Shown: positions 26,779 through 49,559, counted from the first letter of the whole stretch. The stretch: DNA of 63,799 bases, filler included, from Octopus bimaculoides (GCF_001194135.2; 6 parts of 6 records of this genome joined end to end with filler, not necessarily neighbours in it), one strand, 5' to 3'. Numbers and translations are program-made. The notes: generated by a model not told the origin, from the sequence alone.

Positions 26779-27926
26779 GCCTTTATGCCACACCTGTACC
26801 TTTATGCCACCCTACTTTACCTGTTAACTTCCTTATTTTGTGATTGGAGGACATCTAGGTGATATCCGTTAGTGTTTTGTATGTTTGGACAACTGTTTTT
26901 GAAGAAAGACTTCTTCCTGTTATGTTTTTGGTCAACTTCTTAATATTGACCAATGGAAGAAAGACACTTCACAAGAATTAATTTATTGAGTGAGAAGAAC
27001 TAATTGATTAATTGATTTAATTTTGTGGGGTACTTTTTAATACTTGAAAAGGGTGGGAAAATAATAAAAATTACAATTTTTTCAATTTTATAATTATAAT
27101 TCTTTTAATATATATAATCTAATGATTATAATTTTATGATATAATATATAATTGTGTTATAATTTTTTAAACAATTTTATAATTATAAAAAGGAATTATA
27201 AAACGATTGAGAGTGCAACAAAAGGGGTGGAAATAAAAAAAAAACTATAAAATATGTGAAAAAAAGATTAACCCATAAAACTATTCAAACGTGTTTATAT
27301 TTTTAAAATCATGATTTCCTACAAATATATTGGATTTTTTTTTGTATCGGGAAGGGAAATGTGATGTGACGATGTTCATACCTCGTTTGGAAAAAAGGTT
27401 TTGTAAGGGATTATAATACTATTCATGTATAAGAAACCCCCATATTTTTTAAACCTAATTTTTGACAAAAAAATAAAAAGGAGTTCCTTGTACACGTTAA
27501 AATACGGTATTCTTTTCTCTACGACTCTCAGCACATTTGTAATATTGATTCTTTATAACTGGGTTCAAAGTAGTCAAGAAAGAGAAACTGGGAGATTGTG
27601 GCGTTCATACATTTCCATGGGTGTTAAAATGCTTCGCGATGTTTGATGACTTCCACCAAGAATTGAGCCCGCGTCGTACATGAGAATGACCTGCATGCAG
27701 GGATTTGTGGATGACTAAAGAAAATAATAATACGAAAGGTGAAACGGCGGAGTAGTTCATTTTACATCACTTTTTTTTTAAAAAAAGAAAAAAGAAAGAA
27801 GAGGTAATGTGACTATTTGCATAATTTCCATTGTTTCTAAAGGAATATATTGCAAAACGATGCCAGTACGAATAGAAGCAAAAATTTATCTTTTCGTGTA
27901 AGTTGGTCCAGATTTGACAAAAGAGT

Positions 27927-28520
27927 ATGTCTCAAGAGAGAAACGATTCGGAAGAAAATAACCCAATGGAGAATTTGAACAATGATCCAAGTGTGAGCAA
28001 TTTGTCACGAACAGAGAATGAGCCAGGTCGTCTGTCACTCCTCAACAACGAGGAAAACATAGAAATGATGGCGTTACGAGGTCAACACAACGATCAAGAT
28101 CCGCACCCACCACAGCATGGAGCTATCAACGGCACTCACTGGTTCTATCTACTTAATTACCTGGTGCTGTCAGTGTTGAGTATATCTTGCAGTATCGTAC
28201 ATATACTGAAAGTATTCCACCACGTTCCAGATAACGTATTTGCGTATCTGAGTGTCGCTTTAGACCTGGTTATAGCCGTCTGTTCGTTGATAATCTTCTG
28301 CGTCGTTTTCCCGTTTTCCAGACGCAGAACAATGTTACCAAATCGCCGACTCGTTTTCTGTCTCTTGTGTACCTTTTGTAACCTGGTGTCGGCTTCTATC
28401 ATCTTCGGTTTGCGGAATGACTGGATTGCAATCGCCGTTCTTGTCATCAGTATCCTGCTTTTGATCCTGTTATGTATACCGAGGTTGATATCGAATTTTT
28501 TAGTCGTCCAAATTTCGTAA
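27927..28520 (+). CDS. Unrecognised 4-TM membrane protein family, paralog P1 (197 aa)
   Basis: Acidic N-terminus, EENIEM motif and four hydrophobic segments. Aligns by eye to P2-P7. Acceptor AG at 27901-02. Confidence 0.85.
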   Translation: MSQERNDSEENNPMENLNNDPSVSNLSRTENEPGRLSLLNNEENIEMMALRGQHNDQDPHPPQHGAINGTHWFYLLNYLVLSVLSISCSIVHILKVFHHVPDNVFAYLSVALDLVIAVCSLIIFCVVFPFSRRRTMLPNRRLVFCLLCTFCNLVSASIIFGLRNDWIAIAVLVISILLLILLCIPRLISNFLVVQIS

Positions 28521-28714
28521 CCTTACCCTTTCACGATTCTTTTTATTACTTTTCAATGTAGACAGTTATAACTTCTAAATATTTTCATTGCTTTTAAAAA
28601 CATAATTGCAGATAAAATGCAACTAAAAATTTTAATTACAGAGGAGTATTAGAGATTTAATTTTTTAATAATTGTAATATCTTGACTACATTATATTTTA
28701 CTTGTTTGTCATTA

Positions 28715-29012
28715 GACTGCGGCCATTCTGGAACACCGCATTGTACTTATTTTTAAGCCTAGTACTTATTCCAGCGGCCTCTTTAGCCGAACTACTAAGT
28801 TACGGATGCGTAAAAGGATCAACTCTAGTTGTCAAGCAGTGGTGACACATGCACACTCACAGTACGGGCTTCTTTCGATTTCCGTCTACCAAATCCATTT
28901 GCGAGGCTTTGGTCGGCCCGAGACTATAGCAGACACTTGTCCAAGATGTCACGCCGTGGGACTGAACCCGGACCAAGTGGTTGAGAAGCAAACTTCTTAC
29001 CATACTGCCACA
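28715..29012 (-). mobile_element. SINE family A, near full length, inserted in the P1 3' flank
   Basis: Head and 3' domain are both present. The flanks resume homology with the P2 3' flank after the insert. Confidence 0.8.
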
Positions 29013-30389
29013 TGAATTTTTACATCCTGAATTTCACAGGAAGTCTGTAACACTTCGCATAAAGCAAGAAATGCCTACTACACAAAGCCCAGAATCCAAA
29101 TTCACCTGTAACCAATCTAATAAAGCTCAAGAACCAACATTATACAGAGATGGAAGAATTCTTTGTTTGAAACGTCCGAATTCCTGTCTTTCTACTACAA
29201 GTAGACCCTCCAAAATCATTTTTACCGATGCAAACTATCACTCGTTTCTTCAGATCACTCACGGCAGCACAAGGTTTTATCTGCAAAAGAAGCGCTTTAC
29301 GTCTGACATCAAGAAATTGTTTTGCTCTGATAATCTCAAACACCTTGTAATGATACGTTGAATGGACATTACTCTCTGGAATGATAGTGTTCATAATTTC
29401 CAAGGACATTAGAACCATTTGTGAAATTTCTATTTATTTATTTATTTTTTTCCAAACTAAAAATTGAAACCATGTTGTGAATTCGAATGTCCGGCATGCA
29501 AGACCGACTGGAGAAAGAAAACGAGTAAAGTAGAAACTATGAAACAATTCATTTAAGATGATTAATTTTCATCAAAAATAAAGGAAATCAGTTTAACCTC
29601 ATACCCTATTGTTTCTTTCGAATAAATACAAAGCCTGGTCGGACGTTGAGACAAATTTTTTTTCACGTCCTTTGCATTTGAAATCCGAGAGAAAAAAAAT
29701 CTTTAGAAGTAAGGGACAATTCTGTAAGAACTGTTGAAATAACCCTGGGAAGTATATCAACACCAATACAAGTACCTACATCTTATTAAGAGCATTGAAT
29801 GATTTGTGACAATCGCTCTCTTAATAGTATTCCATCTTGTGGTGGTAAAAGAGCTTCCGCCAGTGGTCAGAGCTATGCAGCAAGGGCAACGTCGTCCCAT
29901 CTCGTCTCTCCTCCACTCCCAGTGTCGCATCAGGAACCGACGTCTAAAAGGAAGGAGAAGTAGCTAACGTCAGACGTTCCAAAATTGATACATGAAATTC
30001 TTTCGACTAAAAATGGTACCTTTTGCAGCCCAATAATTCCAGTGAAATTGGTAACACGACGTCTGTTGAAAAATGTGAATCAATTTTCTTTGGTTAACAC
30101 AGCAACGACATACGCCGTAATAACGTGACTGTCTATAAAGCCAATCAATAAAGAAATGGGGAAATGTAACTCTATAGATATTTTTTTAAAAAATACTATT
30201 ATTAAGTTAAGCTTTTGCCTTATTCAAAAGTCTAACACTTACACGTGACTAGTTGAAGGGGAGGGGTAAAAGTAAAAAGAGGGTAATGCGAAGGGTGAGA
30301 GGGAAAGGAGTGTTGTGTATTAAGTCTATAAAATTGTACATAAGGTACAACAAAGTGTGTGAGTGTATATATATTCTTTTATTTTACTC

Positions 30390-30700
30390 TTTTACTGTAG
30401 CACCGCCTTTAGTCGAGCAAATCGACTCCAGGACTTATTCTCTGTAAGCCTAGTACTTATTCTATCGGTCTCTTTTGCTGAACCACTAAGTTATGGGGAC
30501 GTAAACACACCACCATCGGTTGTCAAGCGATGTTGGGGGGGGGGGACACACACATATTTACGACTGGCTTCTTTCAGTTTCCGTCTACCAAATCCACTCA
30601 CAAGGCTTTGGTCAGCCAGAGGCTATAGTAGAAGACACTTGCCCAAGGTGCCACGCAGTGGAACTGAACTCGGAACCATGTGGTTCGTAAGCAAGCTATA
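30390..30700 (-). mobile_element. SINE family A, near full length
   Basis: gtcgagcaaatcgac..gaaccactaagtta..ttcagtttccgtctaccaaatccactcacaaggctttggtc..ggaaccatgtgg. Confidence 0.8.
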
Positions 30701-30994
30701 TATATTTAAAGTGCATTAAGTAATCATCGTATTCCAATTTCCTTCCTTTTTCAATGATTAGCAGATGAGCGACTATTTTTTGATACAGACACGACACAGG
30801 CTACGTTTTCAGTTTTTTTTGTTTGAATAAAGTTTTCAGAAATAACCTAATAAGTTTACTATTAATTCCGTAAAGTATTCACGGATCCCGCTAGCTAGTG
30901 TCATTTTTATTTTATAATTTTTTTCTTGTAACTTATTACCACTAATGAGATTTATTTATAAATACAGAAAAACTGGAGAGGTTTCTGCCAAAGG

Positions 30995-31145
30995 GCTTCT
31001 AGTTTCTTTCTCTGAAATCCACTCACAAGGCCTTGGTCGGGTCTAAGCTATATTAAGAGACACTTGCCTTACCCGAAGTGTCACGCAGTGGGATTGAAAC
31101 CGGCGCCATGTGTTTAGGAAGCAAACTTACCACACAGCCACACCT
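30995..31145 (-). mobile_element. SINE family A, 5' part
   Basis: aaatccactcacaaggccttggtcgg..ggattgaaacc..aaacttaccacacagccac. Confidence 0.75.
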
Positions 31146-31569: not shown

Positions 31570-31778
31570 TCTCAAATTTTGACACAAGGCCAGCAATTTC
31601 GGGGAGTGAGTAAGACGATTACATCGATCCCAGTACTCAACTGGCACTTATTTTATCGAACCCGAAAACGGTGAAAGGCAAAAATCGATCTCTGCAGACT
31701 TTGAACTCAGAACATGAAGACGGACAAAATGCCGCTAAGCATTTTGACCGGCGCGGTAACGATTCTGCCAGCTCGCCA
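31570..31778 (-). mobile_element. SINE family B, full length
   Basis: Reverse complement of ggcgagctggcagaatcgtt..ctgagttcaaa (B-box-like)..ggccttgtgtcaaaattt. Confidence 0.85.
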
Positions 31779-33908: not shown

Positions 33909-34709
33909 TTAAAGCACTGTAAAATTTGATCTCGTGCCCGGTAGACAAAACAGAACCAAAAGTATGATACTACTGACAAGAACGGCTGACATTATCCACT
34001 CGTAATGTAAATAGAAGATTATGGTTGAACATACCAGGTTGCATAAAGTACATAGGAGACAGTGGACAAGAGTGCGATTTGGGAAAACCGATCTTCGCTT
34101 CGAAGCCGGGAAAACAATAAAGAGCATTGCAAACGAGTTGCACAATATCACTACGTCAAGAATTAAACTCAAAAACTCAGTAATGTTTTGATAATTGCGA
34201 ACGAGTTGCAACAGATATACAGCGCTACAGGATAGACAGACGAAACCCAACACTAAATAACCGACTATATAGAGCCAGTGTATATTAGAATACTTGTTAT
34301 TTTGCTGTTGGCTTTGTTGTGGAGATTCTCCTCGCGCAGTCAGTTCTAGGTTTTCCTCACGACCGAGACAGGAAGAAAATGACGGACGACGTGTTGGCCC
34401 CTGATCCACCGGGGTTATTAGTAAATGGCACAAAGTTGGATCATAGTTCAAAATATCCATAGAGCGATCTCCATCAGTTGTTTCAGAATCCTCCATTGTT
34501 CCAAAATCTTCCATTCTTTCAGAATCATCTAGTCTTTCAGAGTCTTCTAGTCTTTCAGAACCATCTAGTCTTTCAGAACCATCTAGTCTTTCAGAGTCAT
34601 CTAGTTCTTCAGAGTCTTCTAGTTTTTCAGGGTATTCTAGTCTTTCAGAATCATCTGTTCTTTCAGAGTTTTCTATTCTTTCTAAACTATCCATTATTTC
34701 TTGAGACAT
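33909..34709 (-). CDS. 4-TM family paralog P2 (266 aa from first ATG; ORF track starts at TTG 34733); hexapeptide-repeat N-terminus
   Basis: Same motifs as the other paralogs (PTRRPSF, EENLEL, IHW, ILD, KRRSVFPNR, CLLCTLCN, LHYEW). Ends NFTVL*. Confidence 0.85.
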   Translation of the reverse strand: MSQEIMDSLERIENSERTDDSERLEYPEKLEDSEELDDSERLDGSERLDGSERLEDSERLDDSERMEDFGTMEDSETTDGDRSMDILNYDPTLCHLLITPVDQGPTRRPSFSSCLGREENLELTARGESPQQSQQQNNKYSNIHWLYIVGYLVLGFVCLSCSAVYLLQLVRNYQNITEFLSLILDVVILCNSFAMLFIVFPASKRRSVFPNRTLVHCLLCTLCNLVCSTIIFYLHYEWIMSAVLVSSIILLVLFCLPGTRSNFTVL

Positions 34710-35486
34710 ATTCTTTTGCTGATTTGAAGCCAACTTAAATGAAAGATTTCCTCTGTCCGAAATAGTAACACTTGGTTATGTTCTGTATTTATTGTTGAAG
34801 AAACAATTAAAATTAAACTGTATTTCGCCTTGAATTAAAAAAAAAGTGGCCTTAAATAGACTATTCCAACGTTTTCAACTAACTTTCATCTTTTTATTTT
34901 CAATAATTAATCAAAGTTTCTTGCATGCAAATCATTCATTCAAATCCACAATACGGTTTCGGTTCATAGTCGACGATATCAAACTTCACTTACGCTTCAA
35001 CATGCCATTTGAAATGTATAAACACTACATCCTCTCACTTTCCCTTTCTTAATAAAGTCTGTGTTCTTAGACACAAGAATCAATATTATAAATGTTTTTG
35101 AAAGTTGCATTCGTGACAAGCGGCAAACACCTACTGGTTTCAATTCAAGACTGGAAACATTTCATGTCATGTTTTATGGCTTAGTAAAAAAAGTAACGAC
35201 CGTAACGCTTTTCAAGATGGCATTGGTGACACGAAAGAAGAAAATTATTCCCAGTCTAGTGATAATTGTGAATGAACGTAACTGTTAAGCCTACCAACCC
35301 ACAAAACAGCAGCAGTCATTGAGACGAGTTTCCAAATAAACATTTAACAAATTTCACTCCTAGAGGTCTTAAAAGACACCGACTCAAAATGTCACGTAGA
35401 GGGATTGACTTAGAAACTTCGATATTCTTAAACAAACGTCTGCGCTTAGATTTATAGTGTTTTTCACTTCCGGCACCTCATTTCAA

Positions 35487-36830
35487 TACTTCTTTATTAC
35501 TCACAAGGGGTTAAATATTACAAGGGACAATACAAGGACAGACAAGACGAGACAAACACGTGGGTGGGTGAAAATGGATGTAAGGGTGAAATGAAACGTA
35601 AAACGAATGATGTAATGATGACCCTCGACCCCATGTCCGGACTCCTTCATTTCACTTTTGATTACTTTTTAAAATAGTCTGAGACATTAATATCAATGTC
35701 CGTTTTCAAATTACCAGCACTTATCATAAATGGTATTTCTGTTTTGTCCATTTTAATTTCGAAGTATTTCGCTTTATCCTCGTAATTATCCAATTTCTTT
35801 TTATCAGATGTATCAACTATTGCACATCCCAAATGCTTGGACATTTCGTTCCAAGTATTTACCACTACCGTACTATCCCAGATCTTGATTTCCCTTAATT
35901 GTTCATTAGTTCATAAAAAAATTAAGTATTTTATCACTTTGTTCCCTTTTTTCCTTTACGGGGAGGGAGTTGGGAGACTGGCTCTGCTTCCCTACGTCCA
36001 ATGCCCCACAACACTGTCTGACCGCATGGAATTACCTTTCCAGATGCCGAACTATAAGTCAATCAACTTCTTCATGTTAAGTTTTGATTCGTATTCCTTA
36101 AGAATGGTGCCGATCACCTCGATTTTCTTGGTATTCAATTCCATGACGATGACAGTGTCTGCATATGTCAAGACGGCTCTTTCGAATTCCAGTCCGTACG
36201 AGATACTCCTCAACAGCTCTCATTTCTGCAGTAGTGGCTCGAGAATCATTACGTACAGAAAATCTGAGAGAGGACATTTTTGATGAACTGAGTGCTTAAT
36301 TTTAAACGGTTCCGATAGGTTTAATTTGACTACCCCGAGAAAATGCCGTTGAAGACAAGAGAGTAACTGTCTGCCTTGGGAACAGCCGCCAAGTAGCAAT
36401 GGTGCAAGCTATCAAAATTGATCCAAGTTTATTAGATCTACAGCAAATCCAGGTTTACTACAAACCATCTCTACGATGTATTGTATGAAGAAGAGGTTTA
36501 ATTATCTTGGATAGACCGGGTGCATATTGCGCATATTTGCATTTTCCCGAACACGCAACCGACGACAAGTACCAACATCTTAATAGCTTCTTGGTTAAAA
36601 TCTTAAATATTGCTTCTATCAGAATTATGCGATGGAAATTATAGATTATGTTCCCTTTGTCCGTGTCTTCTTTAGCAACGCTACTACTTCACGGTATACA
36701 GAACTGGGAACTCACCCGTTTAGCTGCTAATTGCTGTAGACGTCTGGTAAGACAACAGTAAACACTACTGACATACATAAAACTCGTAAGACAGGGTTTT
36801 CAAACTAGGTAATATGTGCCTCGTACAACC
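35487..36830 (-). mobile_element. Decayed Tx1/L1-like LINE: RT fragment, ORF2 end and 3' UTR
   Basis: Minus strand with stops and frameshifts: YEFYVCQ..DVYSN..VVALLKK..FKILTK..RSIQDN..LINLDQ..LSDFLYVMILEPLL..LTYADTV..GIWKG..VVGHWT. 3' end reads cccttgtgagtAATAAAgaagta. Confidence 0.8.
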
Positions 36831-37298
36831 AGCTGTCACATCCTGTATTTCAGCTGATGTTAATTTTCGCATATTCCACCGTGAGTCAAGGTGGGCCGTC
36901 GTGTTTAGTTGTAAAATCCATTACTGTATCTGTATAATTATCCGTATAGAACAATAAAGCAAAGTGTCGCCGGAAAAAGTGCACACATTTCTTCGGAAAC
37001 GAGTACTCGTATCCATCCTGCTCATAAAACATTGACATTAGAAGCAATTTGATAACGTTGGCTGTGAATTGAAACCGTTTCGTAGATTACAATGATCTGC
37101 ATTCAAGAAATTTTGATTGACCAAAGAAAATAGAAAGACCCAAGACGAAACGATGGAATAGTTTATTTAAGACTATATATTTGAATCAAGCCAAAGTGTT
37201 ACTGAGTTTCTAGTGTTTCTTTTAAAGTAATAGATACAAAACTGCTAATATTGAAGAGCGAGAGAGAGAGAGAGAGAGAGAGAAAACTTTTCATTCAG

Positions 37299-38003
37299 AT
37301 GGCTTCAAATCAGCAAATGGACGATGTATGCGAAGAAAATCAGCAAAAGGAAAATATATACGAAGAAATAATGGAGAACCCAGAAAGAACTAACCCAGTT
37401 AGTTCTGCCGATAATGAAGACAGTTCTGCGAATAATGAAGATAGTTCTGTGTATCATGCAGATAGTTCTTCGGGTGATTATCTAATTATGGACAATTCGC
37501 TACGGACATCGAATGAATCGAGGACAACACGTCGCCCATCACTAACTCTCAACGAGGAAAACACAGAAACGACCACGCCGGGAGGATCACAACAGCAGCA
37601 GCAACAGCAAAATCAACAACACGCTACCCCTTATCGTTTGCCCGGTTTGTTGATGTTCAACTACATGCTGTTGTCGTTATTTTGTTTATATTCCAGTGTC
37701 GTAGGTTTAGTGGAGCTGGTAAAGCCTAATCTAGGCACTGTAGAGTATTGGACAATTGTTCTACACATCATTATTGGCGCCAGCTCGTTGGCAATTCTCT
37801 ATTTCGTTTATCCGCTTTCGAAACCGTTTACGAAAATGAGATTTGCTCACTGCATCCTATGTGCCTCACTTAGTGTATTGTCTGCTAGCATAATCATTTA
37901 TTTACATTATGACTGGATTATTCTGGCCGTTTTAATCGTTAGTGCCATACTTTTGATTCTGTTCTGTGCACCGAGGCTGGCTTCGAATTTTTCAGTCGTT
38001 TAA
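37299..38003 (+). CDS. 4-TM family paralog P3 (234 aa, MASNQQ...)
   Basis: ATG directly follows the acceptor ttttcattcAG. The ORF-track extension from 37251 is read-through of a (GA)n tract. Motifs TTRRPSL, polyQ, LHYDW; ends NFSVV*. Confidence 0.85.
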   Translation: MASNQQMDDVCEENQQKENIYEEIMENPERTNPVSSADNEDSSANNEDSSVYHADSSSGDYLIMDNSLRTSNESRTTRRPSLTLNEENTETTTPGGSQQQQQQQNQQHATPYRLPGLLMFNYMLLSLFCLYSSVVGLVELVKPNLGTVEYWTIVLHIIIGASSLAILYFVYPLSKPFTKMRFAHCILCASLSVLSASIIIYLHYDWIILAVLIVSAILLILFCAPRLASNFSVV

Positions 38004-38771: not shown

Positions 38772-38975
38772 AAGGTAGCGAACTTGCAGAATCGTTAACA
38801 CGCCGGACAACAGGCTTAGCGTCTTTACGTTCAGAGTTCAAATTCCGCCGAGGTCGACTTTACCTTTCATCCTTTCGGAGTAAATAAAATAAATGCCAGT
38901 TGAGTACTGGGGTCAATATAATTGGTTTACCCCCTCTTCTGGACTTGCTGGCCTTGTGCCAAAATTTGAAACCAG
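38772..38975 (+). mobile_element. SINE family B, inserted in the P3 3' flank
   Basis: gcagaatcgttaacacgccgg..GAGTTCAAATTCCgccgaggtcgacttt..ggccttgtgccaaaatttgaaacc. Confidence 0.85.
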
Positions 38976-39844
38976 TATTTACAAGACCTGGTCAAACATT
39001 CAGCAATTTTTCATGTCATTTGGTTTAAAATCAACAAAGAATGATTATTTCCTTAGAAACTATGGACGATTCTGTAAGAGCTGATAGAAATAGCCCTACG
39101 AAGTATACGAACTATTCATATACTTGCAACTTAATACGAACATTGAATGAGTTGTGGTTCTCATTATCTTAAAGTATGCAACTTTTTCGTGGTAAGATAG
39201 CTTAAACCAATGACCAGAGCTATGCTAGAAGGGCAACATCGCTCCCCACCCATCCTGTTTTTTATTATCTCTCCTCGGTTTAGTTCTGTCCTGATAGTTG
39301 CAATAATACCTGATTGGTCCAGTTATATACGGCTGAATTACGAGTGTATGTGACCAAAGTACAAAAGATCGAAAATCAAAATCTTGCGACAGTTGTGCAC
39401 TTATAAACCGGTGGCCAGTGAAACGGGTCTCTTTTGAGATCAGTCGTGAATGATGTCGTCAGGGCGAAGAGCTACTATTTTCGAGAGTAGACACCAGGCC
39501 GCGTACAGTTTGTCGTTCAGCTGCCAACCCATCCAAAATATATAGACTTTACTAATGCATAGGAATAAGGATTGTATTCAAGCCACAAGGGCCAAACACA
39601 GAGGGGATGATACAAAATAAACACGGGGTCGGGAAGCGTATGGAAATATATAGAAATGAAATTTATGATAATAAAATTTATAATAAAACGAATGGAAAGT
39701 TTATGATAAATTTATGATTATAAAACGAATGAAAAACAAACAATACAACACTACCATTAAGTGGGGAGACGGTTAAGACCCTGCAAGACACGTTCCTCCA
39801 CTGGACCTTTTGGTTTACTCTTTATGGCCTACGCTAGAAATTCA

Positions 39845-39990
39845 GAAAAAATACTTTGTGTTGATTTTAAATAAACCTTAAATTATTCCATCATTTCAAC
39901 TTCAGTTTTTTTCCCCTAATTTGTCACAGCTTCTTGCTTGCAGATCATTCTAATCCGGGACCGGTTTCAATTCTTAACGTTATTAATCTT
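39845..39990 (-). pseudogene. Orphan 5' flank of the 4-TM family with no CDS following
   Basis: atactttgtgttgattttaa..ccttaaattattccatca..ccggtttcaattctt matches the flanks of P4-P7. The CDS position is occupied by unrelated sequence resembling a LINE 3' end. Confidence 0.65.
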
Positions 39991-40014
39991 CTTTACTCTT
40001 TTACTCTCTTACTT

Positions 40015-40402
40015 GTTTCAGTCATTTGACTGTGACCATGCTGGAGAACGGCCTTTAGTCGAGCAAATCGACCCCCAGGACTTATTCTTTGTAAGCCTAG
40101 TGCTTATTCTATCGGTCACTTTTTGCCGAACCGCTAAGTTACGGGGACGTAAACACACCGGCATCGGTTGTGAAGCGATGCTGATGGGACAAACACAGAC
40201 ACAAACATATACACACACATACATATGTATATATAGATACATATATAGGACGGGATTCTTTCAGTTTCCATCTACCAAATCCACTCACAAGGCTTTGGTC
40301 GGCCCGAGGCTATAGTCGAGGACACTTGCTCAAGTTGCCACACAGTGGAACTGAACCCGGAACTATGTGGTTGGTAAGCAAGCTACTTATCACACAGCCA
40401 TT
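40015..40402 (-). mobile_element. SINE family A, full length
   Basis: All family blocks are present in order, including the internal CA tract. Confidence 0.85.
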
Positions 40403-41329
40403 CCTGCGCCCTTTAGGGCATCAAAATATTATTGGAAATATATGGTCTCTATCTCCTCCTAGTCGCTCTTTTTTATATATNNNNNNNNNNNNNNNNNNNN
40501 NNNNNNNNNNNNNNNNNNNNNNNNNNNNNNNNNNNNNNNNNNNNNNNNNNNNNNNNNNNNNNNNNNNNNNNNNNNNNNNNNNNNNNNNNNNNNNNNNNNN
40601 NNNNNNNNNNNNNNNNNNNNNNNNNNNNNNNNNNNNNNNNNNNNNNNNNNNNNNNNNNNNNNNNNNNNNNNNNNNNNNNNNNNNNNNNNNNNNNNNNNNN
40701 NNNNNNNNNNNNNNNNNNNNNNNNNNNNNNNNNNNNNNNNNNNNNNNNNNNNNNNNNNNNNNNNNNNNNNNNNNNNNNNNNNNNNNNNNNNNNNNNNNNN
40801 NNNNNNNNNNNNNNNNNNNNNNNNNNNNNNNNNNNNNNNNNNNNNNNNNNNNNNNNNNNNNNNNNNNNNNNNNNNNNNNNNNNNNNNNNNNNNNNNNNNN
40901 NNNNNNNNNNNNNNNNNNNNNNNNNNNNNNNNNNNNNNNNNNNNNNNNNNNNNNNNNNNNNNNNNNNNNNNNNNNNNNNNNNNNNNNNNNNNNNNNNNNN
41001 NNNNNNNNNNNNNNNNNNNNNNNNNNNNNNNNNNNNNNNNNNNNNNNNNNNNNNNNNNNNNNNNNNNNNNNNNNNNNNNNNNNNNNNNNNNNNNNNNNNN
41101 NNNNNNNNNNNNNNNNNNNNNNNNNNNNNNNNNNNNNNNNNNNNNNNNNNNNNNNNNNNNNNNNNNNNNNNNNNNNNNNNNNNNNNNNNNNNNNNNNNNN
41201 NNNNNNNNNNNNNNNNNNNNNNNNNNNNNNNNNNNNNNNNNNNNNNNNNNNNNNNNNNNNNNNNNNNNNNNNNNNNNNNNNNNNNNNNNNNNNNNNNNNN
41301 NNNNNNNNNNNNACAAAAGCTTTTAGCTT

Positions 41330-41750
41330 GAGGGGAGATAGCTCCATCAAGCAAACCAGTGTAGCAAAATTGAAAAAAAAATTGCATTGTAACAATTAAG
41401 AACATTTCAAGTATTCTTTATTTAAAATGTAATAAAATTTTCAGCTAAGCCTTGAGTGTAAAATTGCAATAGGATTAAGAAATCACGGGTTTAAAAAAGA
41501 ATTAACAAAGCTTAAGGTTTTAACTTGTGACTGTGTAGCCAGGATATTTTAAGTATAAAATTATATTTTAGTATCTTTTTTTTTTTTTTTCAGTTCATCT
41601 GCATTTCTAAAAAGTAAAATATTTAAAGTTTAACTACATCAAAAAATAAAACTGGGAGGATTGAATGTTAAAAGTTGAAGATGGTTATAGATTTTGAAGA
41701 GTGTAACAGTCGACAACGAACACGTACGCAAAACAGATCTGAAAGTATAG
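41330..41750 (-). pseudogene. Remnant C-terminus and 3' flank of an additional 4-TM paralog
   Basis: aagttgaagatggttatagattttgaaga matches the stop region of P2 (33886-33915). 41330-41690 aligns with 47390-47745. Confidence 0.55.
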
Positions 41751-42319: not shown

Positions 42320-42937
42320 TTATTGTTTCTTGCAACAATATAATGCACACGAAAACAGAATCATTTGCAATAAAGTACTGAGAAGAACAGCTACAGTTAG
42401 CAACTCCGAGTGCACATAGTACAGACTGGCAGCAGAAAACAAATTAAGTATGGAACATAGGAAAGGAGGATCAAGAGAGCGAGTTTGGAAATCTGATCTT
42501 CGCTTCGAAAGTTGAAAGACGATACTGAAAATTATTGACGAACTGACGACTATAAATGCGTCTAGAATAATATTCCAGTAGTTTGGCACAGTTGAAAAAT
42601 TGCGAATTCGTAGCAACAGATCTATAACGCTGCAAAATAAACAAATAAAGGACATCAACAGGTAGATGAGTATATAAACCCAGTGTATGTAGACGCTGTG
42701 TCTCATATGATCATTTGTAGTATGCTGCTGGTTCTGCTGCTGATCGCGGGGTTGATTTTGTCGAGATGCTCCTAGCGCGGTCATTTCTATATTTTCCTCA
42801 TCGCTGACAGTAGAAGAAAGTGAGACACGACGCGTTGGCCTCGAACCATATGATGTTCCTGGCAAATTGATCATACTTCGAGCATTATTCAAACTCTCCA
42901 TAGAACTATCTCTGTTAGTACTTTCAGAATCCTCCAT
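42320..42937 (-). CDS. 4-TM family paralog P4 (205 aa) with altered TM3 and a replaced C-terminal tail
   Basis: PTRRVSL, EENIEMTALG, IHW, RNFS, ILD, KRRSDF motifs. Acceptor at 42980-81. Ends CCKKQ*. Confidence 0.8.
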   Translation of the reverse strand: MEDSESTNRDSSMESLNNARSMINLPGTSYGSRPTRRVSLSSTVSDEENIEMTALGASRQNQPRDQQQNQQHTTNDHMRHSVYIHWVYILIYLLMSFICLFCSVIDLLLRIRNFSTVPNYWNIILDAFIVVSSSIIFSIVFQLSKRRSDFQTRSLDPPFLCSILNLFSAASLYYVHSELLTVAVLLSTLLQMILFSCALYCCKKQ

Positions 42938-43292
42938 TCTTTCTTGAGATGTAATCTTCTCTCGTCGGTTTGAAGCTAACTGACATAAAAAAAAATTTCC
43001 TCTCTCCGAATTTTTAGCAATTCACCATGTTTGGTATTTATTGTCTCGAAAACAATAGAAATTATTAAAACACCTTGTATCGATTTTAAAGAGTGACCTT
43101 AAATAAACTATTCCATCATGTCAACATTTTTTTCTTTTGGTCAATCACAGCTATTTGCATGCGGGAGCGGTTTCAATTCTTATTCGACGTTTAGTTTTTG
43201 CCATTATTCTAATGACAGGTTTTATTATATTCATTATATGTGAATCTGGTCTTGTAGAAGGCTGTTTACTACTTTGTCCCCACAAGCATATC

Positions 43293-43816
43293 CTACATAC
43301 AATCGAAGCAAAATAACTGATTTATTCTTTCATTATGTAAATAAAAGATAATGGTAGCAGACAACAGATTAAGTACGGCACATATGAGAGAAGGAACGAG
43401 AGGGTGATTTGGAAAATCGGATTTTCGCTTCAAAAATTCAAAGACGATACAGAAGATTGAAAACGAGTTGGCAGCTATAATCACAACTAGAATAATATTC
43501 CAGTAGTTTGGCACAGTTGAAAAATTGCGAATTCTTGGCAACAGATCAATAATGCTGCAGAATAAACAAATAAATGACAGCACCATGTAAATGAGTATAT
43601 ACCCAGTGAATACTATAATCATTGGTAGTGAGCCGCTGGTTTCGCCGAGATGCTCCTAGCAAGGTCATTTCTATGTCTTCCTCGTTGTTGGCATCGGAAG
43701 CAAATGGACAACGTGTTGGCCTCGAACCATACGATGTTCCTGGAGAATTGCTCATACTTAGAGCATTATTTAAACTCTCCACAGGACTATCTCCATTAGT
43801 TCCTTCAGAATTCCAT
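43293..43816 (-). pseudogene. 4-TM family paralog P5, frameshifted; close duplicate of P4
   Basis: Relative to P4: a 2-bp deletion after ATG GA, a 2-bp deletion in the TATATA of the WVYILI codons, and loss of TM4 after LHNE. This explains the split ORFs 43546-43782 and 43293-43622. Confidence 0.8.
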
Positions 43817-45039
43817 TCTGTCTTCAGTCGTAAACTTTTGGCGATTTAAAGCTAACTGACGTAAAACAATTTCCTCTCTTCGAATTATTAACAATTCACC
43901 ATGTTTGGTATTTATTGACAATGAAACAATAAAAGTTTAAAATATACTTTGTGCTGATTTTAAAAAGTGACCTTAAATAAACTATTCCATCATGTCAACC
44001 TTTTCTCTCCTAGTTAGTCACAGTCTCTTACATTTTAATCAACGAGCGATTTCAATCCTTAGTTGACGTCATCAAAATTCATTTGGACATCAAAATGTTA
44101 TTGGAAATACATAAACATTATTTGTCGCTCATATTTTTATTAACGCTTTTATTCAATTTTATACTTGATGCAGACGAGTCTTATTACAGAAGATCTCCTT
44201 TCGAGGGGAGATAACTATCTAGTACCCAGCATGGTGACAAGAAAATTGGAGCAAAGCTGCGTGATAGATGTGATAAGTAGACCATCTGAAATTGCATTTT
44301 TATCCTTCTCTTCCATTTTATTGGCATGCGCAGGTACAGGTCGACAGGTACAAGTCGCCAGGTCACGATCGTCGCCCAGATAGATGCATTTAATTTATGG
44401 GCGTTTGTTGGGGTCTAATGTCACTCAAACACTCCGATACCCCACCACCCGAATGCAAGAGGACTAATATTTAAACTAATGACTTTTCAGATAATGTCAA
44501 TTTGCCACTATTATATACTAAGAAGATATTTTGGCTATTTTTTGTTTTTTTTTTATGTGTGCATGGTAGTCTCATTTTCATAAAATGTGCTCAGCAATCC
44601 ATGCTATGTGAGTGACAATCCCAGCGCTTTATGGGTTAATGACAATCGGTTTGCAAAAGGAAGGCAAAAATTCTGAATATTCTGTTGTAATAATGATTTG
44701 GGTGTTATTAATTTCACTATATGTAAGTACGAGTTGGTGCAGTGGGTATATTAGGATTAAATCACCGTCAAATGTCTGACATCGTGTGAAATGTTACAGG
44801 TTTTCTGAGAAAATCGGGGTGTAGAATTCATTTATCTAACATTTATAAAAAAATTGGAATTATCAAAAACTAAAATTGAAAGAATATTAATCGCCAACAA
44901 TGGAGTCACTGTAATTAGAATGCTTGGCTATAGTTTATATACAATTTTTTAAAAAACCAATTGAAATATTTAAAAGTTATATGTATATAGAAAAGTAATA
45001 TAAAACAGAAATTATCGAATATACAAAATTTCAAGTTGG

Positions 45040-45651
45040 TTACAAGTTTTGAATGACTATAAAGCTCAACCTGAAGCCGTGTGCACACAGTAGTGCAAAA
45101 AGTATGATACTACAGAGAAAAACTGCGAGTGTAAACCGGTCATAATTTAATCCGAAGATAATGGCAGCGGGCAATAGGTTAAATATGGTACAGAAGAGAC
45201 AGTAGATGAGAGTACGATTTGGGAAAAGTAATCCTCGCTTCGAAATCGGGAAAATTGAACAGAAGATTATCAACGAGTTATTTGCGATAATCACGTTCAT
45301 GATAATACTCCAGCGATGTGATATATCTGGATGTTTGCGAACGAGATGCACCAAATCTGTAACACTGCAGGATAAACTGATCGCACTCAACACCAGAGAG
45401 ATGAGTATAAACAGCCAATGTATATCAGAATATTTGGCCATGCGACGTCGGTTCTGATGTTGCTGAGATCCACCTTGATCAGTCATTTGTTCGTTTTCCT
45501 CGTTGCTGGTAGAGGAAGTAAATGACAGACGATATGTTGGCCACGAATCAGTTGAGGCTAGTAACGATTCAATTGTAAGTGGAGCATTGTTCAAATTATC
45601 CGCAGAACTATCAGTGTCAATGTTTTCTTCCATGCTGTCTGAATCCTCCAT
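45040..45651 (-). CDS. 4-TM family paralog P6 (203 aa)
   Basis: PTYRLSF, EENEQM, IHW, KRGLLFPNR, CLFCTIFN motifs and four TM segments. Acceptor at 45691-92. Confidence 0.85.
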   Translation of the reverse strand: MEDSDSMEENIDTDSSADNLNNAPLTIESLLASTDSWPTYRLSFTSSTSNEENEQMTDQGGSQQHQNRRRMAKYSDIHWLFILISLVLSAISLSCSVTDLVHLVRKHPDISHRWSIIMNVIIANNSLIIFCSIFPISKRGLLFPNRTLIYCLFCTIFNLLPAAIIFGLNYDRFTLAVFLCSIILFALLCAHGFRLSFIVIQNL

Positions 45652-46174
45652 TCTCGCCTGAGATAAATTCTTTTTCTTATTCGAAGCCAGCTGACATGAA
45701 ATGTTTCCTTTTCTTAAAATTTTAGTACCGCATCACGTTTTTCTATTTATTCTCTAAGAAACAATAGAAATGATGCAAATCTTTGTTCTGATTTTAGAAA
45801 GTGGCCTTAAATGTGCAATTCCATAATTTCACCGTACATCTTTTTTTTTTTTTTCCTTTAATCAATCACATTGTTTTGCATGCAGTACATTCTCATCTAC
45901 GATGCGGTTTCAATTCTTAGTCGACGTCATCAAACATCACTTTCACTTCAAGATGTCATTTAAAATGTATGAACACTATATTTTTCCAGTTTCCTTTTCT
46001 TATAAAAAGAATGTTCTTAGACGCAAAAATCAATATCATAAAAGTGTTGAGATTTGCTGAGTATAAGGTGAAGTTGTGACAAACTGCAAACACTTCCTGG
46101 TTCCAGTTCTTTTATGGCTCAGTACGAGAGTAATTGTCATAACCCCTTTCACGGTGATATTGGTAACATGAAAG

Positions 46175-47040: not shown

Positions 47041-47389
47041 AGCAAGATAATTTTAATTTTCAATCCGTCTGTTGTATAACATGTCGAAGCCAACCTTCGT
47101 CTTAAGAACTTTATTGTCCTAAATGTTTCAATAACTTAAATGTAATTCTGTGAACTATCGTTGCTTAAAAAAAAAAAAAAAAAAAAAAATAGCGATCGCA
47201 ATCAGTGTTCCGATTACAGCCGTTTCCAAAATTATATATTTCAGAGCTTGGATTTGTTTATGCAATGTAAAATGTATTTCATAAGGAAAATTCTATTTGA
47301 TTTTATGTGATCTTGAAAAAAAAAATTCTTTGATATTTTGGTCCGGTTTCATATTTCATACTTGAGGTAATGGCAAGTGAAAGTTTTGA

Positions 47390-47745: not shown

Positions 47746-48119
47746 AAAGTCATCATAGACCTCTGTACACACAAGGCTGGATTCTTTATATGTGAATCTG
47801 GTCTTATGGGCATTATTTTAGTCTTCCATCCCTCAAGCATGTCATACATCATGTAAAATGTTATACGTTGAATGTAACATTCTGAGAGTAGAATTCACTA
47901 ACGCAACGTGGCCAAAAAAAAACGAATGCCAAAAGAAGATTTTTTCCGATAGTATAGTCACGTCTTCGAAGTGTCTGGTTACATTTAAGTTTATAGTTAT
48001 TTTTAAAGGCAATTAAAATATTTAAATGTTATAACGAATTAACTACATTAAAACATGATAAAAAAAAAACTCAGGAATTACTGAATATACAGTTGAAGTT
48101 GATTCTAGATTTTGAATAA

Positions 48120-48725
48120 CTATAAACGCGACATCAACCATGGTATATACAACAGAAGCAAAAGTATGAAAGTACTGATAAGAATGACTAGAGTCATCCC
48201 TTCATGATGTAAGTAGTACATAATTGTAGCAGATAACAGGTTACATACAGCACAAAGGAGACAGACAAAGACAGAGCGATTTGTGAAATCAGCTCTTCGC
48301 TTCAAAGATTGAAAGACGATACACAAAATTGTCAACGAGTTGGCTGTTATAACCACGTCGAGAAAAATATTCCAATAGTCTAACATAGCTGAAAAATTGC
48401 GAATTCTTTTCAACAGATCTATCATACTGCAGAATAAACTAATAAATGATAACACCAGGTAGACGAATTTATGGCTCCAGCGCATAGTATTATCATTAAT
48501 AGTGTGTCGCTGGTTCTGCTGTTGATCGCGGAGTTCAGGTTGCCGAGCCGCTCCTAGTGCGATCATTTCTATATTTTCCTCATTACTAACGTTGGAAGCA
48601 AGTGACTGACGACGTGTTGGCCTCAAAGTATTCGACGGTTGTAGTAAATTGCTCCTGCTTGGATCATTGTTCACATTATCTCCATTAGTTCTTTCAAGGT
48701 TTCCCATTAATTCCGAATCCGCCAT
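48120..48725 (-). CDS. 4-TM family paralog P7 (201 aa from first ATG; ORF track starts at GTG 48767)
   Basis: PTRRQSL, EENIEMIALG, RNFS, FLD, KRRADFTNR, CLLCAVCN, LHHE motifs. Ends MSRL*. Confidence 0.82.
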   Translation of the reverse strand: MADSELMGNLERTNGDNVNNDPSRSNLLQPSNTLRPTRRQSLASNVSNEENIEMIALGAARQPELRDQQQNQRHTINDNTMRWSHKFVYLVLSFISLFCSMIDLLKRIRNFSAMLDYWNIFLDVVITANSLTILCIVFQSLKRRADFTNRSVFVCLLCAVCNLLSATIMYYLHHEGMTLVILISTFILLLLLYIPWLMSRL

Positions 48726-48937
48726 TCTTTCTGGAGATGAAATCTTTTGCCAATTTGAAGTTAACACAAAAATTTCGCTCTTTGAATACTTAACAATTCA
48801 CCATGCTGGATATTTATTGTCTAGGAAACAATAGAAATTAAAAAATACTTTGTATTGATTTTTAAAAATATTACCTTAAATAAACTATTCCATCAAGCCA
48901 GCTTCATTTTTTTTTACCTCCTAGTTAATTACATGTT

Positions 48938-49330
48938 AAATGAAAAATCTAATAAGAGTCAAACTGAATTATGAGATGTTCGAACCCGATGAAAGAGCGG
49001 TTTTATTGGAGGAAGAGAAAAAGGAAAGACTGATGGAGTTATTTGAAACCAGAATTAGACCTACAGGGATATATATACAATACGACAGTTTACCCAATGT
49101 GATGGAATACATAACAGACAAAAAAGACTGATAATTGATATGTATAATGAGAACAGTAAAATGGAACTGCAAGCTTTGGGGGAGGGCGGCTCGTAAGCCA
49201 TTGCATCCTTTCATTGTTAAATATTTCATTTCGTATTTCATCATTCGTTTTATGTACCCCACGTTTTGTGTTGTCTGTCCTTCTCGTAATCTCTCCTCTT
49301 TTTTAAGGCTATATGCCGCAATAAAGAAAT
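48938..49330 (+). mobile_element. 5'-truncated LINE 3' end with a 16-bp target-site duplication, inserted in the P7 upstream flank
   Basis: TAGTTAATTACATGTT at 48922-37 and 49331-46. Insert has an ORF end (..EYITDKKD*), a UTR like that of 35487-35660, and AATAAAGAAA at the end. Confidence 0.8.
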
Positions 49331-49559
49331 TAGTTAATTACATGTTGCAGGTAGATCATTTTAACCCACGCGCGGTTTCAATTCTAGACTTGACGTTATC
49401 AAATTTCATTTGTGCCTTCAAAATACTATTGGAAATATATNNNNNNNNNNNNNNNNNNNNNNNNNNNNNNNNNNNNNNNNNNNNTTAATTAATTAANNNN
49501 NNNNNNNNNNNNNNNNNNNNNNNNNNNNNNNNNNNNNNNNATGAATTTCACATTTACAT

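What the first reader, a model, noticed from the sequence alone, without database searches (positions are those of the whole stretch)
27600..49440. Tandem cluster of an unrecognised four-transmembrane protein family (6 intact genes, 1 pseudogene, several remnants)
Seen: seven homologous single-exon ORFs of about 200-270 aa in 22 kb, oriented +,-,+,-,-,-,-. They share an acidic/Ser-rich N-terminus, a TRRxS-like motif, EENxEM, a Q-rich linker and four hydrophobic helices with short loops. Paralogs are strongly diverged, yet six frames remain open, which argues for real genes. I cannot assign the family to tetraspanin, claudin, MS4A, MARVEL or any receptor class by eye. Inference: a lineage-specific, locally expanding membrane family, possibly a receptor accessory, channel or sensory/immune component. 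This is the best candidate for an undescribed system in the window.
Basis: partly seen in the sequence, partly recalled or inferred. Interest (0 to 1): 0.88.

Follow-up and report, generated by a model that had tools for sequence, protein, structure and literature searches.

The report
Octopod-only four-helix membrane protein gene cluster
A 21-kb stretch of an octopus-like genome carries six intact genes and one broken copy of a small four-pass membrane protein family that was found only in octopods, matches no known protein family or fold, and has no known function.

Summary
Seven paralogous single-ORF loci lie at 27927-48767 in orientation +,-,+,-,-,-,-. Six are intact (197-274 codons). One (g5) is a pseudogene with two frameshifts and no fourth helix. 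No further coding remnants exist, only three non-coding flank fragments. The assembly gap (40481-41312) is intergenic and touches no family gene.

A profile search of 1.84 billion representative proteins found 22 relatives. Every one that carries a source name is an "uncharacterized" or "hypothetical" octopod protein (Octopus bimaculoides, O. sinensis, Argonauta hians), and these too sit in tandem clusters. There is no Pfam hit on record, no PDB sequence hit and no significant Foldseek hit. hhalign against CD20 gave 2% probability.

AlphaFold with 29 family sequences gives a confident four-helix bundle after a disordered acidic tail. Charge statistics place both termini in the cytosol. dN/dS is 0.2-0.8, below 1 by bootstrap in 7 of 8 pairs tested, so these are real, fast-evolving genes. 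Each copy has a conserved TATA-like block upstream.

Function is inferred only. I favour a phosphorylation-regulated membrane adaptor or auxiliary subunit. No transcript evidence could be obtained. This is an orphan, clade-restricted family of moderate interest.

The parts
27927..28520 (+). g1: intact family gene, 197 aa, ATG start. It lacks the RRxS motif (has GRLS).
   Evidence: Family HMM E = 2.7e-73.
33909..34733 (-). g2: intact family gene. The ancestral start codon is TTG here, so the first ATG is at 34709 (about 266 aa). The N-tail carries an 18-nt repeat of 11.2 copies at 34481-34682, which encodes the (D/E)SERL(D/E) units seen in the ORF translation.
   Evidence: Its relative on L001 keeps ATG-GCA-TCA-AAT.
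37251..38003 (+). g3: intact family gene. The probable start is the ATG at 37299 (MASNQQ, 234 aa). It has a 21-nt repeat of 3.3 copies in the N-tail.
42320..42937 (-). g4: intact family gene, 205 aa, with a divergent C-terminus (CCKKQ).
43293..43816 (-). g5: pseudogene closest to g4 and g7. It has two 2-nt frameshift deletions, in-frame deletions of 3 and 24 nt, a premature stop, and has lost TM4.
45040..45651 (-). g6: intact family gene, 203 aa. Its motif is degenerate (TYRLS), and the ancestral upstream start is CTG.
48120..48767 (-). g7: intact family gene. The probable start is the ATG at 48725 (MADSEL, 201 aa). This copy was used for the structure model.
43097..43114 (-). Conserved upstream block GGAATAGTTTATTTAAGG (TATA-like), 117-179 nt before the start codon. 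Other copies: 34850-34867(-), 37155-37172(+), 43971-43988(-), 48874-48891(-). Diverged copies: 27749-27766(+, g1) and 45805-45822(-, g6).
   Evidence: (5 matches against 0.08 expected by chance). The same block lies 165-181 nt upstream of P0002 in O. bimaculoides.
39831..39976 (-). Orphan upstream-element remnant (positions -252 to -83 of a family gene) with a degenerate TATA-like block at 39876-39889. Its distal piece is at 40413-40443, and a SINE-like insert at 39977-40412 splits the two. No coding sequence survives below it.
41642..41748 (-). Fragment of the 3' end of a family gene (-56 to +60 around a stop codon). No reading frame is left.
49345..49440 (-). Distal upstream element (-319 to -222). 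It is most simply g7's own, displaced by an insertion of roughly 350 nt. It is cut by the end of the piece.
40481..41312 (.). Assembly gap. It is intergenic, between the orphan upstream remnant and the 3' fragment, and no family frame crosses it.

Best explanation
What it is (shown): a tandem array of an orphan gene family that was found only in octopods. Each copy is an independent single-coding-exon gene that carries a conserved TATA-like block upstream.

The protein has two parts:
- a disordered, strongly acidic N-terminal tail of 55-260 residues that evolves by in-frame tandem-repeat expansion;
- a compact bundle of four antiparallel transmembrane helices with very short loops.

Topology (inferred from charge bias and sequons): both termini and the basic TM2-TM3 loop (S-K-R-R..F-P-N-R) face the cytosol. 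Only about 10 and 4 residues face outward.

How it most likely works (inferred, not shown): the helix bundle anchors and positions the protein in a membrane. The bundle is rich in conserved Ser, Cys, Asn, Asp and His, and probably packs against itself or against a partner membrane protein. The cytosolic tail presents two conserved linear motifs: a basophilic-kinase-type site, P-x-R-R-x-S-[LF], and an acidic E-E-N-x-E-M motif. On this reading the family acts as phosphorylation-regulated membrane adaptors or auxiliary subunits. That resembles MS4A/FcεRIβ or LAPTM proteins in logic, but not in descent.

My confidence differs by claim: about 0.9 that this is a real octopod-restricted four-helix membrane family, and about 0.3 for the adaptor mechanism.
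For: Reality of the genes:
- Seven loci share 33-52% amino-acid identity.
- Among paralogs pS exceeds pN in every pair over the full alignment, with dN/dS 0.43-0.70.
- For eight closest-relative pairs dN/dS is 0.23-0.79, and the bootstrap 95% upper bound is below 1 in 7 of them.
- O. bimaculoides has five open ORFs of the family in 20.7 kb, one of them cut by the start of the locus.

Taxonomic range:
- The profile search of 1.84e9 representatives gave 23 hits, 22 of them genuine.
- All named hits are O. bimaculoides, O. sinensis or A. hians, labelled uncharacterized or hypothetical. Many carry consecutive locus tags.

No known family:
- Pfam is '-' for P0001, P0002, P0003, P0007, P0008 and P0017.
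- PDB profile searches gave nothing.
- Foldseek against PDB gave best E = 0.13, to generic soluble four-helix bundles; against BFVD the best E was 0.03.
- CD20 hhalign probability was 2.2%.

Structure and topology:
- The AF2 model built from 29 sequences has pLDDT of about 80-91 over the transmembrane domain. Helices span 75-109, 115-142, 149-172 and 176-200. Most of residues 1-55 score below 50, and the first 60 average 47-50.
- Loop 2 has 72 K/R against 13 D/E. Loops 1 and 3 are net negative. The tail averages -8 per sequence. An N-x-S/T sequon sits in loop 1 in 10 of 29 members.

Motifs:
- [RK][RK]x[ST] occurs in the tail of 15 of 29 members, Argonauta paralogs included.
- E-E-N is invariant in the six window proteins.

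Conserved polar transmembrane positions: C99, S100, H103, D123, S130, C155, C158, N162, S184, S185.

Promoter-like block.
Against: - No transcript or protein evidence could be obtained. The Logan contigs that carry relatives are genomic.
- The exact look-ups that were run found the O. bimaculoides, O. sinensis and A. hians family proteins only on genome assemblies.
- Selection is weak. dN/dS reaches 0.79 and one bootstrap interval includes 1.
- The RRxS motif is absent from g1 and from about half the family.
- The kinase-site, glycosylation and adaptor readings rest on consensus patterns only.
- A four-helix bundle is too simple a fold for Foldseek to exclude distant homology.
- The iterated search was limited. 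Only one exhaustive profile search was allowed, and it was built from the six window sequences.
Confidence: 0.6

Rival explanations
1. The proteins oligomerise into a small ion or proton channel, or a cation-binding pore (Orai-, CALHM- or viroporin-like in logic). Conserved polar residues in the helices would line the pathway.
For: - Polar or ionisable residues are conserved inside or at the outer ends of the helices: H103 (TM1), D123 and S130 (TM2), N162 (TM3), D175 (loop 3), S184/S185 (TM4).
- The compact four-helix unit has minimal loops.
- The basic cytosolic loop and the regulated tail would suit gating.
Against: - There is no structural or sequence match to any solved channel.
- Small polar residues are equally typical of tight helix packing.
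- None of the polar positions is invariant across the family.
Confidence: 0.15
2. They are extremely diverged members of a known tetraspan superfamily (MS4A/CD20-TMEM176, MARVEL, SCAMP-like or similar) whose sequence signal has been erased by fast evolution.
For: - The gross architecture matches MS4A: about 200-270 aa, four transmembrane helices, both ends cytosolic, and tandem gene arrays.
- Evolution is fast. The closest relatives in other species share only 45-70% identity.
Against: - No Pfam hit is on record for six members.
- hhalign against CD20 gave 2.2% probability, and the only aligned stretch is an acidic tail segment.
- CD20, FcεRIβ, claudin, tetraspanin and Orai chains are all absent from the top 50 Foldseek hits.
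- Loops of 10 and 4 residues exclude the tetraspanin EC2 and the claudin ECL1.
Confidence: 0.15
3. The ORFs are not functional genes. They would be a decaying array of duplicated sequence or ORFs carried by a repeat element, kept open by chance or by recent duplication.
For: - One copy is already a pseudogene, and flank remnants exist.
- dN/dS is fairly high.
- No transcript evidence was found.
- Start codons have been lost and replaced in four copies.
Against: - dS among copies is 0.5-1.5, yet six frames of about 200 codons stay open. The family stays open in three other octopod genomes too.
- The four-helix pattern, the motifs and the charge bias are conserved as far as Argonauta.
- There are no terminal repeats, transposase or reverse transcriptase in the repeated unit, which is only about 1.2-1.5 kb of gene plus flanks.
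- Copies sit in a few clusters and are not dispersed.
Confidence: 0.05
4. Each ORF is only the last or largest exon of a longer multi-exon gene, so the protein and promoter described here are incomplete.
For: - Eukaryotic context.
- The conserved region extends about 300 nt upstream of the ATG.
- The O. sinensis model P0004 spans 1134 nt for 366 aa, and the tool reports that the locus does not translate to the query.
Against: - NCBI's model for P0002 is one uninterrupted 723-nt coding stretch.
- Relatives begin with Met at the same aligned place (MASN.. or MEDSE..).
- A TATA-like block sits 117-179 nt upstream of the start, with no conserved acceptor-like AG tract right before the ATG.
- A 5'UTR intron cannot be excluded.
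Confidence: 0.05

Closest known systems
MS4A / CD20 / FcεRIβ family (Pfam CD20, PF04103) and TMEM176
   Same: Small proteins of about 200-300 aa with four transmembrane helices and both termini cytosolic. Genes lie in tandem arrays and paralogs evolve fast. The cytosolic tails carry phosphorylation and signalling motifs, and the proteins work as oligomeric adaptors or co-receptors rather than enzymes.
   Different: There is no detectable homology: hhalign probability 2.2%, no Pfam hit and no Foldseek hit. The MS4A TM1 signature is absent. The second extracellular loop here is 4 residues, against about 45 in CD20. The long tail is N-terminal and acidic.
LAPTM4/5 and SCAMP-type trafficking tetraspans
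   Same: Four closely spaced helices with minimal luminal loops. Function resides in cytosolic linear motifs and in a conserved basic TM2-TM3 loop (SCAMP 'E peptide'). This comparison rests on my background knowledge.
   Different: No sequence or Pfam relationship is on record. There are no PY or NPF motifs. The motifs here are RRxS and EENxEM.
Clade-specific tandem gene arrays of cephalopods
   Same: Albertin et al. 2022 (PMC9068888) report arrays of genes with no similarity to known proteins and regard them as clade-specific families. The present array fits that picture.
   Different: That paper names decapodiform examples (suckerins, beak proteins, unnamed D. pealeii arrays). No paper in the searchable library mentions the octopod accessions of this family.
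Generic four-helix up-down bundles (ROP, pectin methylesterase inhibitor)
   Same: These are the best Foldseek matches: TM-score 0.41-0.42 normalised to the query and 0.52-0.67 normalised to the target.
   Different: They are soluble proteins, E is 0.13 or worse, and identity is 8-14%. This is a geometric resemblance only.

Membership tests
MS4A/CD20 (PF04103) | Sequence-profile similarity of the four-TM domain to CD20 or FcεRIβ | tested here: not met
   hhalign of the 29-sequence family alignment against human CD20 gave 2.2% probability. Only an acidic tail segment aligned. No Pfam hit is on record for six members.
MS4A/CD20 (PF04103) | Fold match to solved CD20 or FcεRIβ structures | tested here: not met
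   Foldseek against PDB. CD20 and FcεRIβ chains are in the library but absent from the top 50 hits, and the best E overall is 0.13.
Tetraspanin (PF00335) | Large second extracellular loop (EC2) with a CCG motif and conserved cysteines | tested here: not met
   The TM3-TM4 loop is 3-4 residues (H-x-D-W) in the model and in the alignment. No Pfam hit is on record.
Claudin / PMP22 / LHFPL (PF00822, PF13903) | First extracellular loop of about 50 residues forming a β-sheet, with W-GLW-C-C | tested here: not met
   Loop 1 is about 10 residues and has no cysteine pair. The model has no strands. There is no Pfam or Foldseek match.
MARVEL (PF01284) | Match to the MARVEL domain profile | tested here: not met
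   The precomputed Pfam column is '-' for P0001, P0002, P0003, P0007, P0008 and P0017. No independent HHpred run was possible.
Transposon- or virus-derived ORF | Association with terminal repeats, transposase, RT or integrase, dispersed copies, or viral structural homologues | tested here: not met
   The repeat unit is the gene plus about 300-nt flanks only. Copies are clustered. BFVD Foldseek gave a best E of 0.03, to uncharacterised giant-virus membrane proteins.
Octopod orphan four-TM family (defined here) | Acidic disordered N-tail, then a P-x-R-R-x-S-type motif, then an E-x-E-M-type acidic motif, then four helices carrying the SCSxxH, (D/E)Y..LD, CLxCxxxNL and D-W..SS signatures | tested here: met
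   All six intact window genes score E of 1e-60 to 1e-78 against the family HMM.
Expressed protein-coding gene | Transcript or peptide evidence | not testable with these tools
   No RNA-seq resource is at hand. The Logan contigs with relatives are genomic. Only indirect support is available: dN/dS below 1 and NCBI and Argonauta gene models.

The most novel reading that the evidence does not exclude
The family is a new, octopod-invented class of membrane signalling subunit. These would be tetraspan proteins that assemble with octopod sensory or neuronal receptors or channels (for example in suckers, skin or brain), or that form a cation- or proton-sensitive pore using the conserved His/Asp/Asn positions. 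Kinase phosphorylation of the RRxS tail would switch them. This would be an evolutionarily independent counterpart of MS4A/TARP-type auxiliary subunits.
Probability: 0.1. Interest if true: 0.8.

Novelty: new variant of a known kind. Interest (0 to 1): 0.42.

Why it matters
Cephalopod novelties are thought to owe much to clade-specific gene families arranged in tandem arrays, and most of these have no assigned function. This family gives a cleanly delimited example:
- it is octopod-wide (Octopus to Argonauta);
- it has a confident four-helix membrane fold;
- its tail carries conserved short motifs that can be tested directly;
- its copies share an upstream block, which suggests co-regulation.

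If the genes prove to be expressed in a specialised tissue, they become candidates for an independently evolved class of membrane adaptor or channel subunit. If they are not expressed, the array shows how long weakly constrained ORFs can persist. Either way, several intact copies appear to lack gene models. The window's six proteins are absent from the protein collection, and only one of the five ORFs in the O. bimaculoides locus has a gene model in the data returned for that locus.

Tried and rejected
1. Word-indexed homology search. With the seven-sequence alignment it returned nothing (8000 candidates, probably saturated by low-complexity words). With a TM-only 28-sequence alignment it returned only P0017, missing members whose exact sequence was in the query. 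I judged it uninformative and left the third search unused.
2. PDB sequence profiles gave nothing. NCBIfam gave nothing.
3. The first AF2 run with 6 sequences was poor (pLDDT 52.6). It was replaced by the 29-sequence run.
4. Exact look-ups of window proteins for contigs or transcripts found none on record.
5. I tried to read the Logan contigs as transcripts. They are genomic: no poly(A), microsatellite ends, and collinear flanks.
6. Searches for the SRA run numbers and for five accessions in the literature gave nothing relevant.
7. An internal duplication (TM1-2 against TM3-4) was rejected: hhalign probability 1%.
8. An eighth gene spanning the assembly gap was rejected. Both flanking remnants are on the minus strand, and both place their gene bodies away from the gap.
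9. Synteny with the SMYD-like gene was not seen within ±10 kb of the O. sinensis, A. hians or O. bimaculoides loci fetched.
10. PDZ-ligand and dileucine readings of the termini were considered and dropped because they are inconsistent across members.
11. Rfam and tRNA scans of the piece were empty.

Full report

The ORF list, a protein alignment and tblastn of each copy against the piece confirm seven paralogous loci:

| Copy | Coordinates | Strand | Length / note |
|---|---|---|---|
| g1 | 27927-28520 | + | 197 aa |
| g2 | 33909-34733 | - | 274 codons from a TTG |
| g3 | 37251-38003 | + | |
| g4 | 42320-42937 | - | 205 aa |
| g5 | 43293-43816 | - | pseudogene |
| g6 | 45040-45651 | - | 203 aa |
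| g7 | 48120-48767 | - | |

Amino-acid identity between copies is 33-52%.

- an acidic, Ser-rich N-terminus;
- P-T-R-R-x-S (absent in g1, TYRLS in g6);
- E-E-N-x-E-M, with E-E-N invariant in the six intact copies;
- a Q-rich linker;
- four hydrophobic helices.

A DNA alignment of g5 with g4 and g7 shows why g5 is broken. It has a 2-nt deletion directly after the ATG and a second 2-nt deletion at the start of TM1. It also has in-frame deletions of 3 nt (in the RRx motif) and 24 nt (Q linker). A premature stop leaves a diverged 3' end that removes TM4.

**2. Remnants and the assembly gap**

A six-frame HMM scan with the family profile found nothing beyond the seven loci; the next best hit has E = 0.087. 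"Several remnants" is therefore true only for non-coding flank pieces:

- An orphan copy of the family's upstream element lies on the minus strand at 39831-39976. Its distal part is at 40413-40443. A SINE-like insert at 39977-40412 separates the two.
- A fragment of a gene's 3' end lies at 41642-41748, also on the minus strand.
- The piece at 49345-49440 is best read as g7's own distal upstream region, displaced by an insertion.

The gap at 40481-41312 lies between the first two remnants. Both are on the minus strand. The promoter remnant points to lower coordinates, and the 3' fragment implies a gene body at higher coordinates. No coding frame therefore runs into the gap, and the ORFs "across" it are runs of X. 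The gap's true length and content remain unknown.

**3. Relatives elsewhere**

The word-indexed search found nothing useful. The exhaustive HMM search of 1.84 billion cluster representatives, using a profile of the six intact proteins, found 23 hits with E ≤ 1e-3. Twenty-two of them have the same architecture.

Sources:
- O. bimaculoides XP_014789313.1, "uncharacterized protein LOC106882980";
- O. sinensis XP_036366638.1, "uncharacterized protein LOC118766890";
- about 17 Argonauta hians "hypothetical proteins", many with consecutive locus tags (000608300-000608700, 000612600-000613400, 001334400-001335100);
- five unnamed proteins from SRA-derived (Logan) contigs. Three of these contigs were fetched and are genomic.

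No hit came from outside octopods. The window's own six proteins are not in the 15-billion-protein collection.

The O. bimaculoides locus (L002, CM046620.1 near 9.97 Mb) holds five open family ORFs at about 5-kb spacing, all on one strand. One of them is cut by the start of the locus. Only one of the five has a gene model on record there.

The window shares 65-79% DNA identity with that locus. It therefore comes from a different octopod.

**4. History of the cluster**

A neighbour-joining tree gives these pairings:

| Window copy | Closest relative |
|---|---|
| g2 | L001 |
| g7 (with g4 as sister) | O. bimaculoides P0002 |
| g3 | Obi_d |
| g6 | P0006 |
| g1 | P0005, next to the Obi_e / O. sinensis P0004 pair |

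An Argonauta protein falls outside the last group. Most duplications therefore predate the split of these octopods. g5 was not in the tree; it is closest to g4 and g7 (about 61% identity). Only the g4/g5/g7 group looks like a recent local duplication.

The tails differ between close relatives through different in-frame tandem repeats:
- an 18-nt unit of 11.2 copies in g2, and a 21-nt unit in g3;
- an 11-residue DSPEDNLRTDG unit in P0004 and Obi_e;
- NG(N/K) repeats in P0002.

The ancestral start codon (ATG GCT TCA AAT, MASN...) survives in g3 and in the L001 relative. It is TTG in g2, CTG in g6 and lost in g4 and g7, all of which can use a downstream ATG.

**5. Are they genes?**

- Nei-Gojobori estimates among the window paralogs give pS above pN in every pair over the full alignment, with dN/dS 0.43-0.70.
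- Eight closest-relative pairs give dN/dS 0.23-0.79. The bootstrap 95% upper bound is below 1 in seven of them.
- With dS of 0.5-1.5, unconstrained 200-codon frames at 38% GC would not stay open. About 6.6% of random codons are stops, which is my estimate.
- The helix pattern, the motifs and the charge distribution persist as far as Argonauta.

This argues for real but weakly constrained, fast-evolving genes.

Upstream of each copy lies a block, GGAATAGTTTATTTAAGG, 117-179 nt before the start codon:
- The window has five matches with at most 3 mismatches, against 0.08 expected by chance.
- g1 and g6 carry diverged versions.
- The same block lies upstream of P0002 in O. bimaculoides.

Further conserved blocks lie nearer the ATG. 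A distal block contains a TGACGTC-like core in g5 and g6.

I read this as a shared TATA-type core promoter plus regulatory sites. That reading is inference.

I could find no direct transcript evidence.

**6. The protein**

AlphaFold2 with the 29-sequence alignment gives mean pLDDT 74 and pTM 0.56. The transmembrane domain scores about 80-91. Helices span 75-109, 115-142, 149-172 and 176-200 of the 201-aa g7 protein. Most of residues 1-55 score below 50, and the first 60 average 47-50.

Charge counts across the family:

| Region | Charge |
|---|---|
| TM2-TM3 loop | 72 K/R against 13 D/E |
| Loops 1 and 3 | net negative |
| N-tail | -8 per protein |

By the positive-inside rule both termini and loop 2 are cytosolic. 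An N-x-S/T sequon sits in loop 1 in 10 of 29 members, which is consistent with that loop facing outward.

The most conserved positions are polar or small residues in the helices:
- C99, S100 and H103 in TM1;
- Y117, D123 and S130 in TM2;
- C155, C158 and N162 in TM3;
- D175 in loop 3;
- S184 and S185 in TM4.

TM1-2 and TM3-4 show no sign of an internal duplication.

**7. Comparison with known families**

- The Pfam column is empty for six members.
- PDB sequence profiles gave nothing. NCBIfam gave nothing.
- Foldseek against PDB gave best E = 0.13, to soluble up-down bundles (ROP, pectin methylesterase inhibitor) and to partial GPCR overlaps with TM-scores of 0.2-0.3. No CD20, FcεRIβ, claudin, tetraspanin, Orai or CALHM chain is in the top 50.
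- BFVD gave best E = 0.03, to uncharacterised giant-virus membrane proteins.
- hhalign of the family against human CD20 gave 2.2% probability. The CD20 sequence was verified against 6vja. The only aligned stretch is an acidic tail segment (NEEDIEI against NEENIEM), which I take as chance.
- Loop lengths alone exclude tetraspanin and claudin.

In architecture and genomic habit the family works like MS4A-type tetraspans. It is not a detectable member of any known family.

The literature library holds no mention of the accessions. Albertin et al. 2022 note that cephalopod genomes contain arrays of genes with no similarity to known proteins (PMC9068888).

**8. Mechanism**

Shown: the domain layout and the motif conservation.

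Inferred from the charge bias and the loop-1 sequons: the topology.

Also inferred: so little of the protein faces outward that the working parts must be the bundle within the membrane and the cytosolic tail and loop.

My preferred reading is a non-enzymatic membrane adaptor or auxiliary subunit. The bundle would pack with itself or with a partner membrane protein. The tail would recruit cytosolic factors under control of a basophilic kinase acting at RRxS. I put this at about 0.3.

The rivals are:
- a small oligomeric channel using the conserved His, Asp and Asn (0.15);
- a diverged member of a known tetraspan superfamily (0.15);
- non-functional ORFs (0.05);
- an incomplete gene model (0.05).

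**9. Verdict**

It overstates local expansion, and it leaves function open.

Relatives are already deposited as uncharacterised proteins, and clade-specific arrays are a known feature of cephalopod genomes. This is therefore a new family of a familiar kind rather than a new kind of system. Interest is moderate, and would be higher if tissue-specific expression or a partner were shown.

Noticed in passing
window 20621-21421 (+) and 25239-25922 (+): A neighbouring multi-exon SMYD-like gene. One ORF is TPR-like by my reading of its sequence (not tested). A later ORF matches the C-terminal half of the SET domain of SMYD3 (residues 195-285, E = 1e-13). It ends in a MYND zinc finger that matches the CBFA2T1 MYND. 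Having the MYND after the SET domain, rather than inside it, is unusual for SMYD proteins. An N gap at 24880-24989 lies between the exons.
   Followed up: partly
window 28747-28944, 30438-30703, 30996-31068, 39977-40412: Four copies of a SINE-like dispersed repeat of about 300-400 nt (73-92% identity), some followed by CA/TA microsatellite. One copy splits the orphan upstream element. There are no Rfam or tRNA hits.
   Followed up: partly
window 34481-34682 (g2), 37307-37469 (g3); P0004, P0002, L002:19219-20262: The N-terminal tails grow by in-frame tandem repeats, and the repeats differ between close relatives. g2 has an 18-nt unit of 11 copies (DSERLE-like). g3 has 21-nt and 30-nt units. O. 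sinensis and O. bimaculoides have an 11-residue DSPEDNLRTDG unit. P0002 has NG(N/K) repeats.
   Followed up: partly
window 34731-34733, 37299-37301, about 42985, about 45700, about 48765: Start-codon turnover. The ancestral ATG (MASN...) is kept in g3 and in the L001 relative. It is TTG in g2, CTG in g6 and lost in g4 and g7, which start at a downstream ATG. g4 and g6 also carry a short out-of-frame upstream ATG (ATGTCAG...) in the presumed leader.
   Followed up: partly
L002 (O. bimaculoides CM046620.1:9964032-9984754): Five open family ORFs sit at about 5-kb spacing on one strand, one of them cut by the start of the locus. Only one (XP_014789313.1) is listed as a called gene in this locus, so the others may be unannotated.
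   Followed up: partly
L006 (O. sinensis CM016876.1) 5147-5742, 10001-11134 and 19079-19687: Three g1-like copies lie in 21 kb. The copy at 5147-5742 matches in two frames that join at 5443, so it has a frameshift: either a pseudogene or an assembly error. The NCBI model P0004 spans 1134 nt for 366 aa, and the tool reports that the locus does not translate to the query.
   Followed up: no
window 36118-36605, against L002 8976-9460: The best-conserved non-coding stretch between the window and O. bimaculoides (79% over 493 nt) lies in intergenic DNA between family genes. It could be a shared transposable element or a conserved regulatory region.
   Followed up: no
window 31604-31771, 38780-38936, 23215-23372; L002 7569-8554 and 12158-12280: Another dispersed repeat family (76-84% identity) is shared between the window and the O. 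bimaculoides locus. It is presumably a transposable element.
   Followed up: no
window 44062-44074 (g5), 45920-45932 (g6): The distal upstream block, about 250-280 nt before the start codon, contains TGATGACGTC(A/G)AC, a near-consensus cAMP-response-element core. The other copies carry degenerate versions.
   Followed up: no
human CD20 residues 252-271, against the family motif: The only hhalign overlap with CD20 is its cytosolic 'SSQPKNEEDIEIIPI' against the family's 'SNVSNEENIEMIAL'. CD20 also has an N-terminal RRMSS. Both are probably chance resemblances between acidic or basophilic linear motifs.
   Followed up: partly
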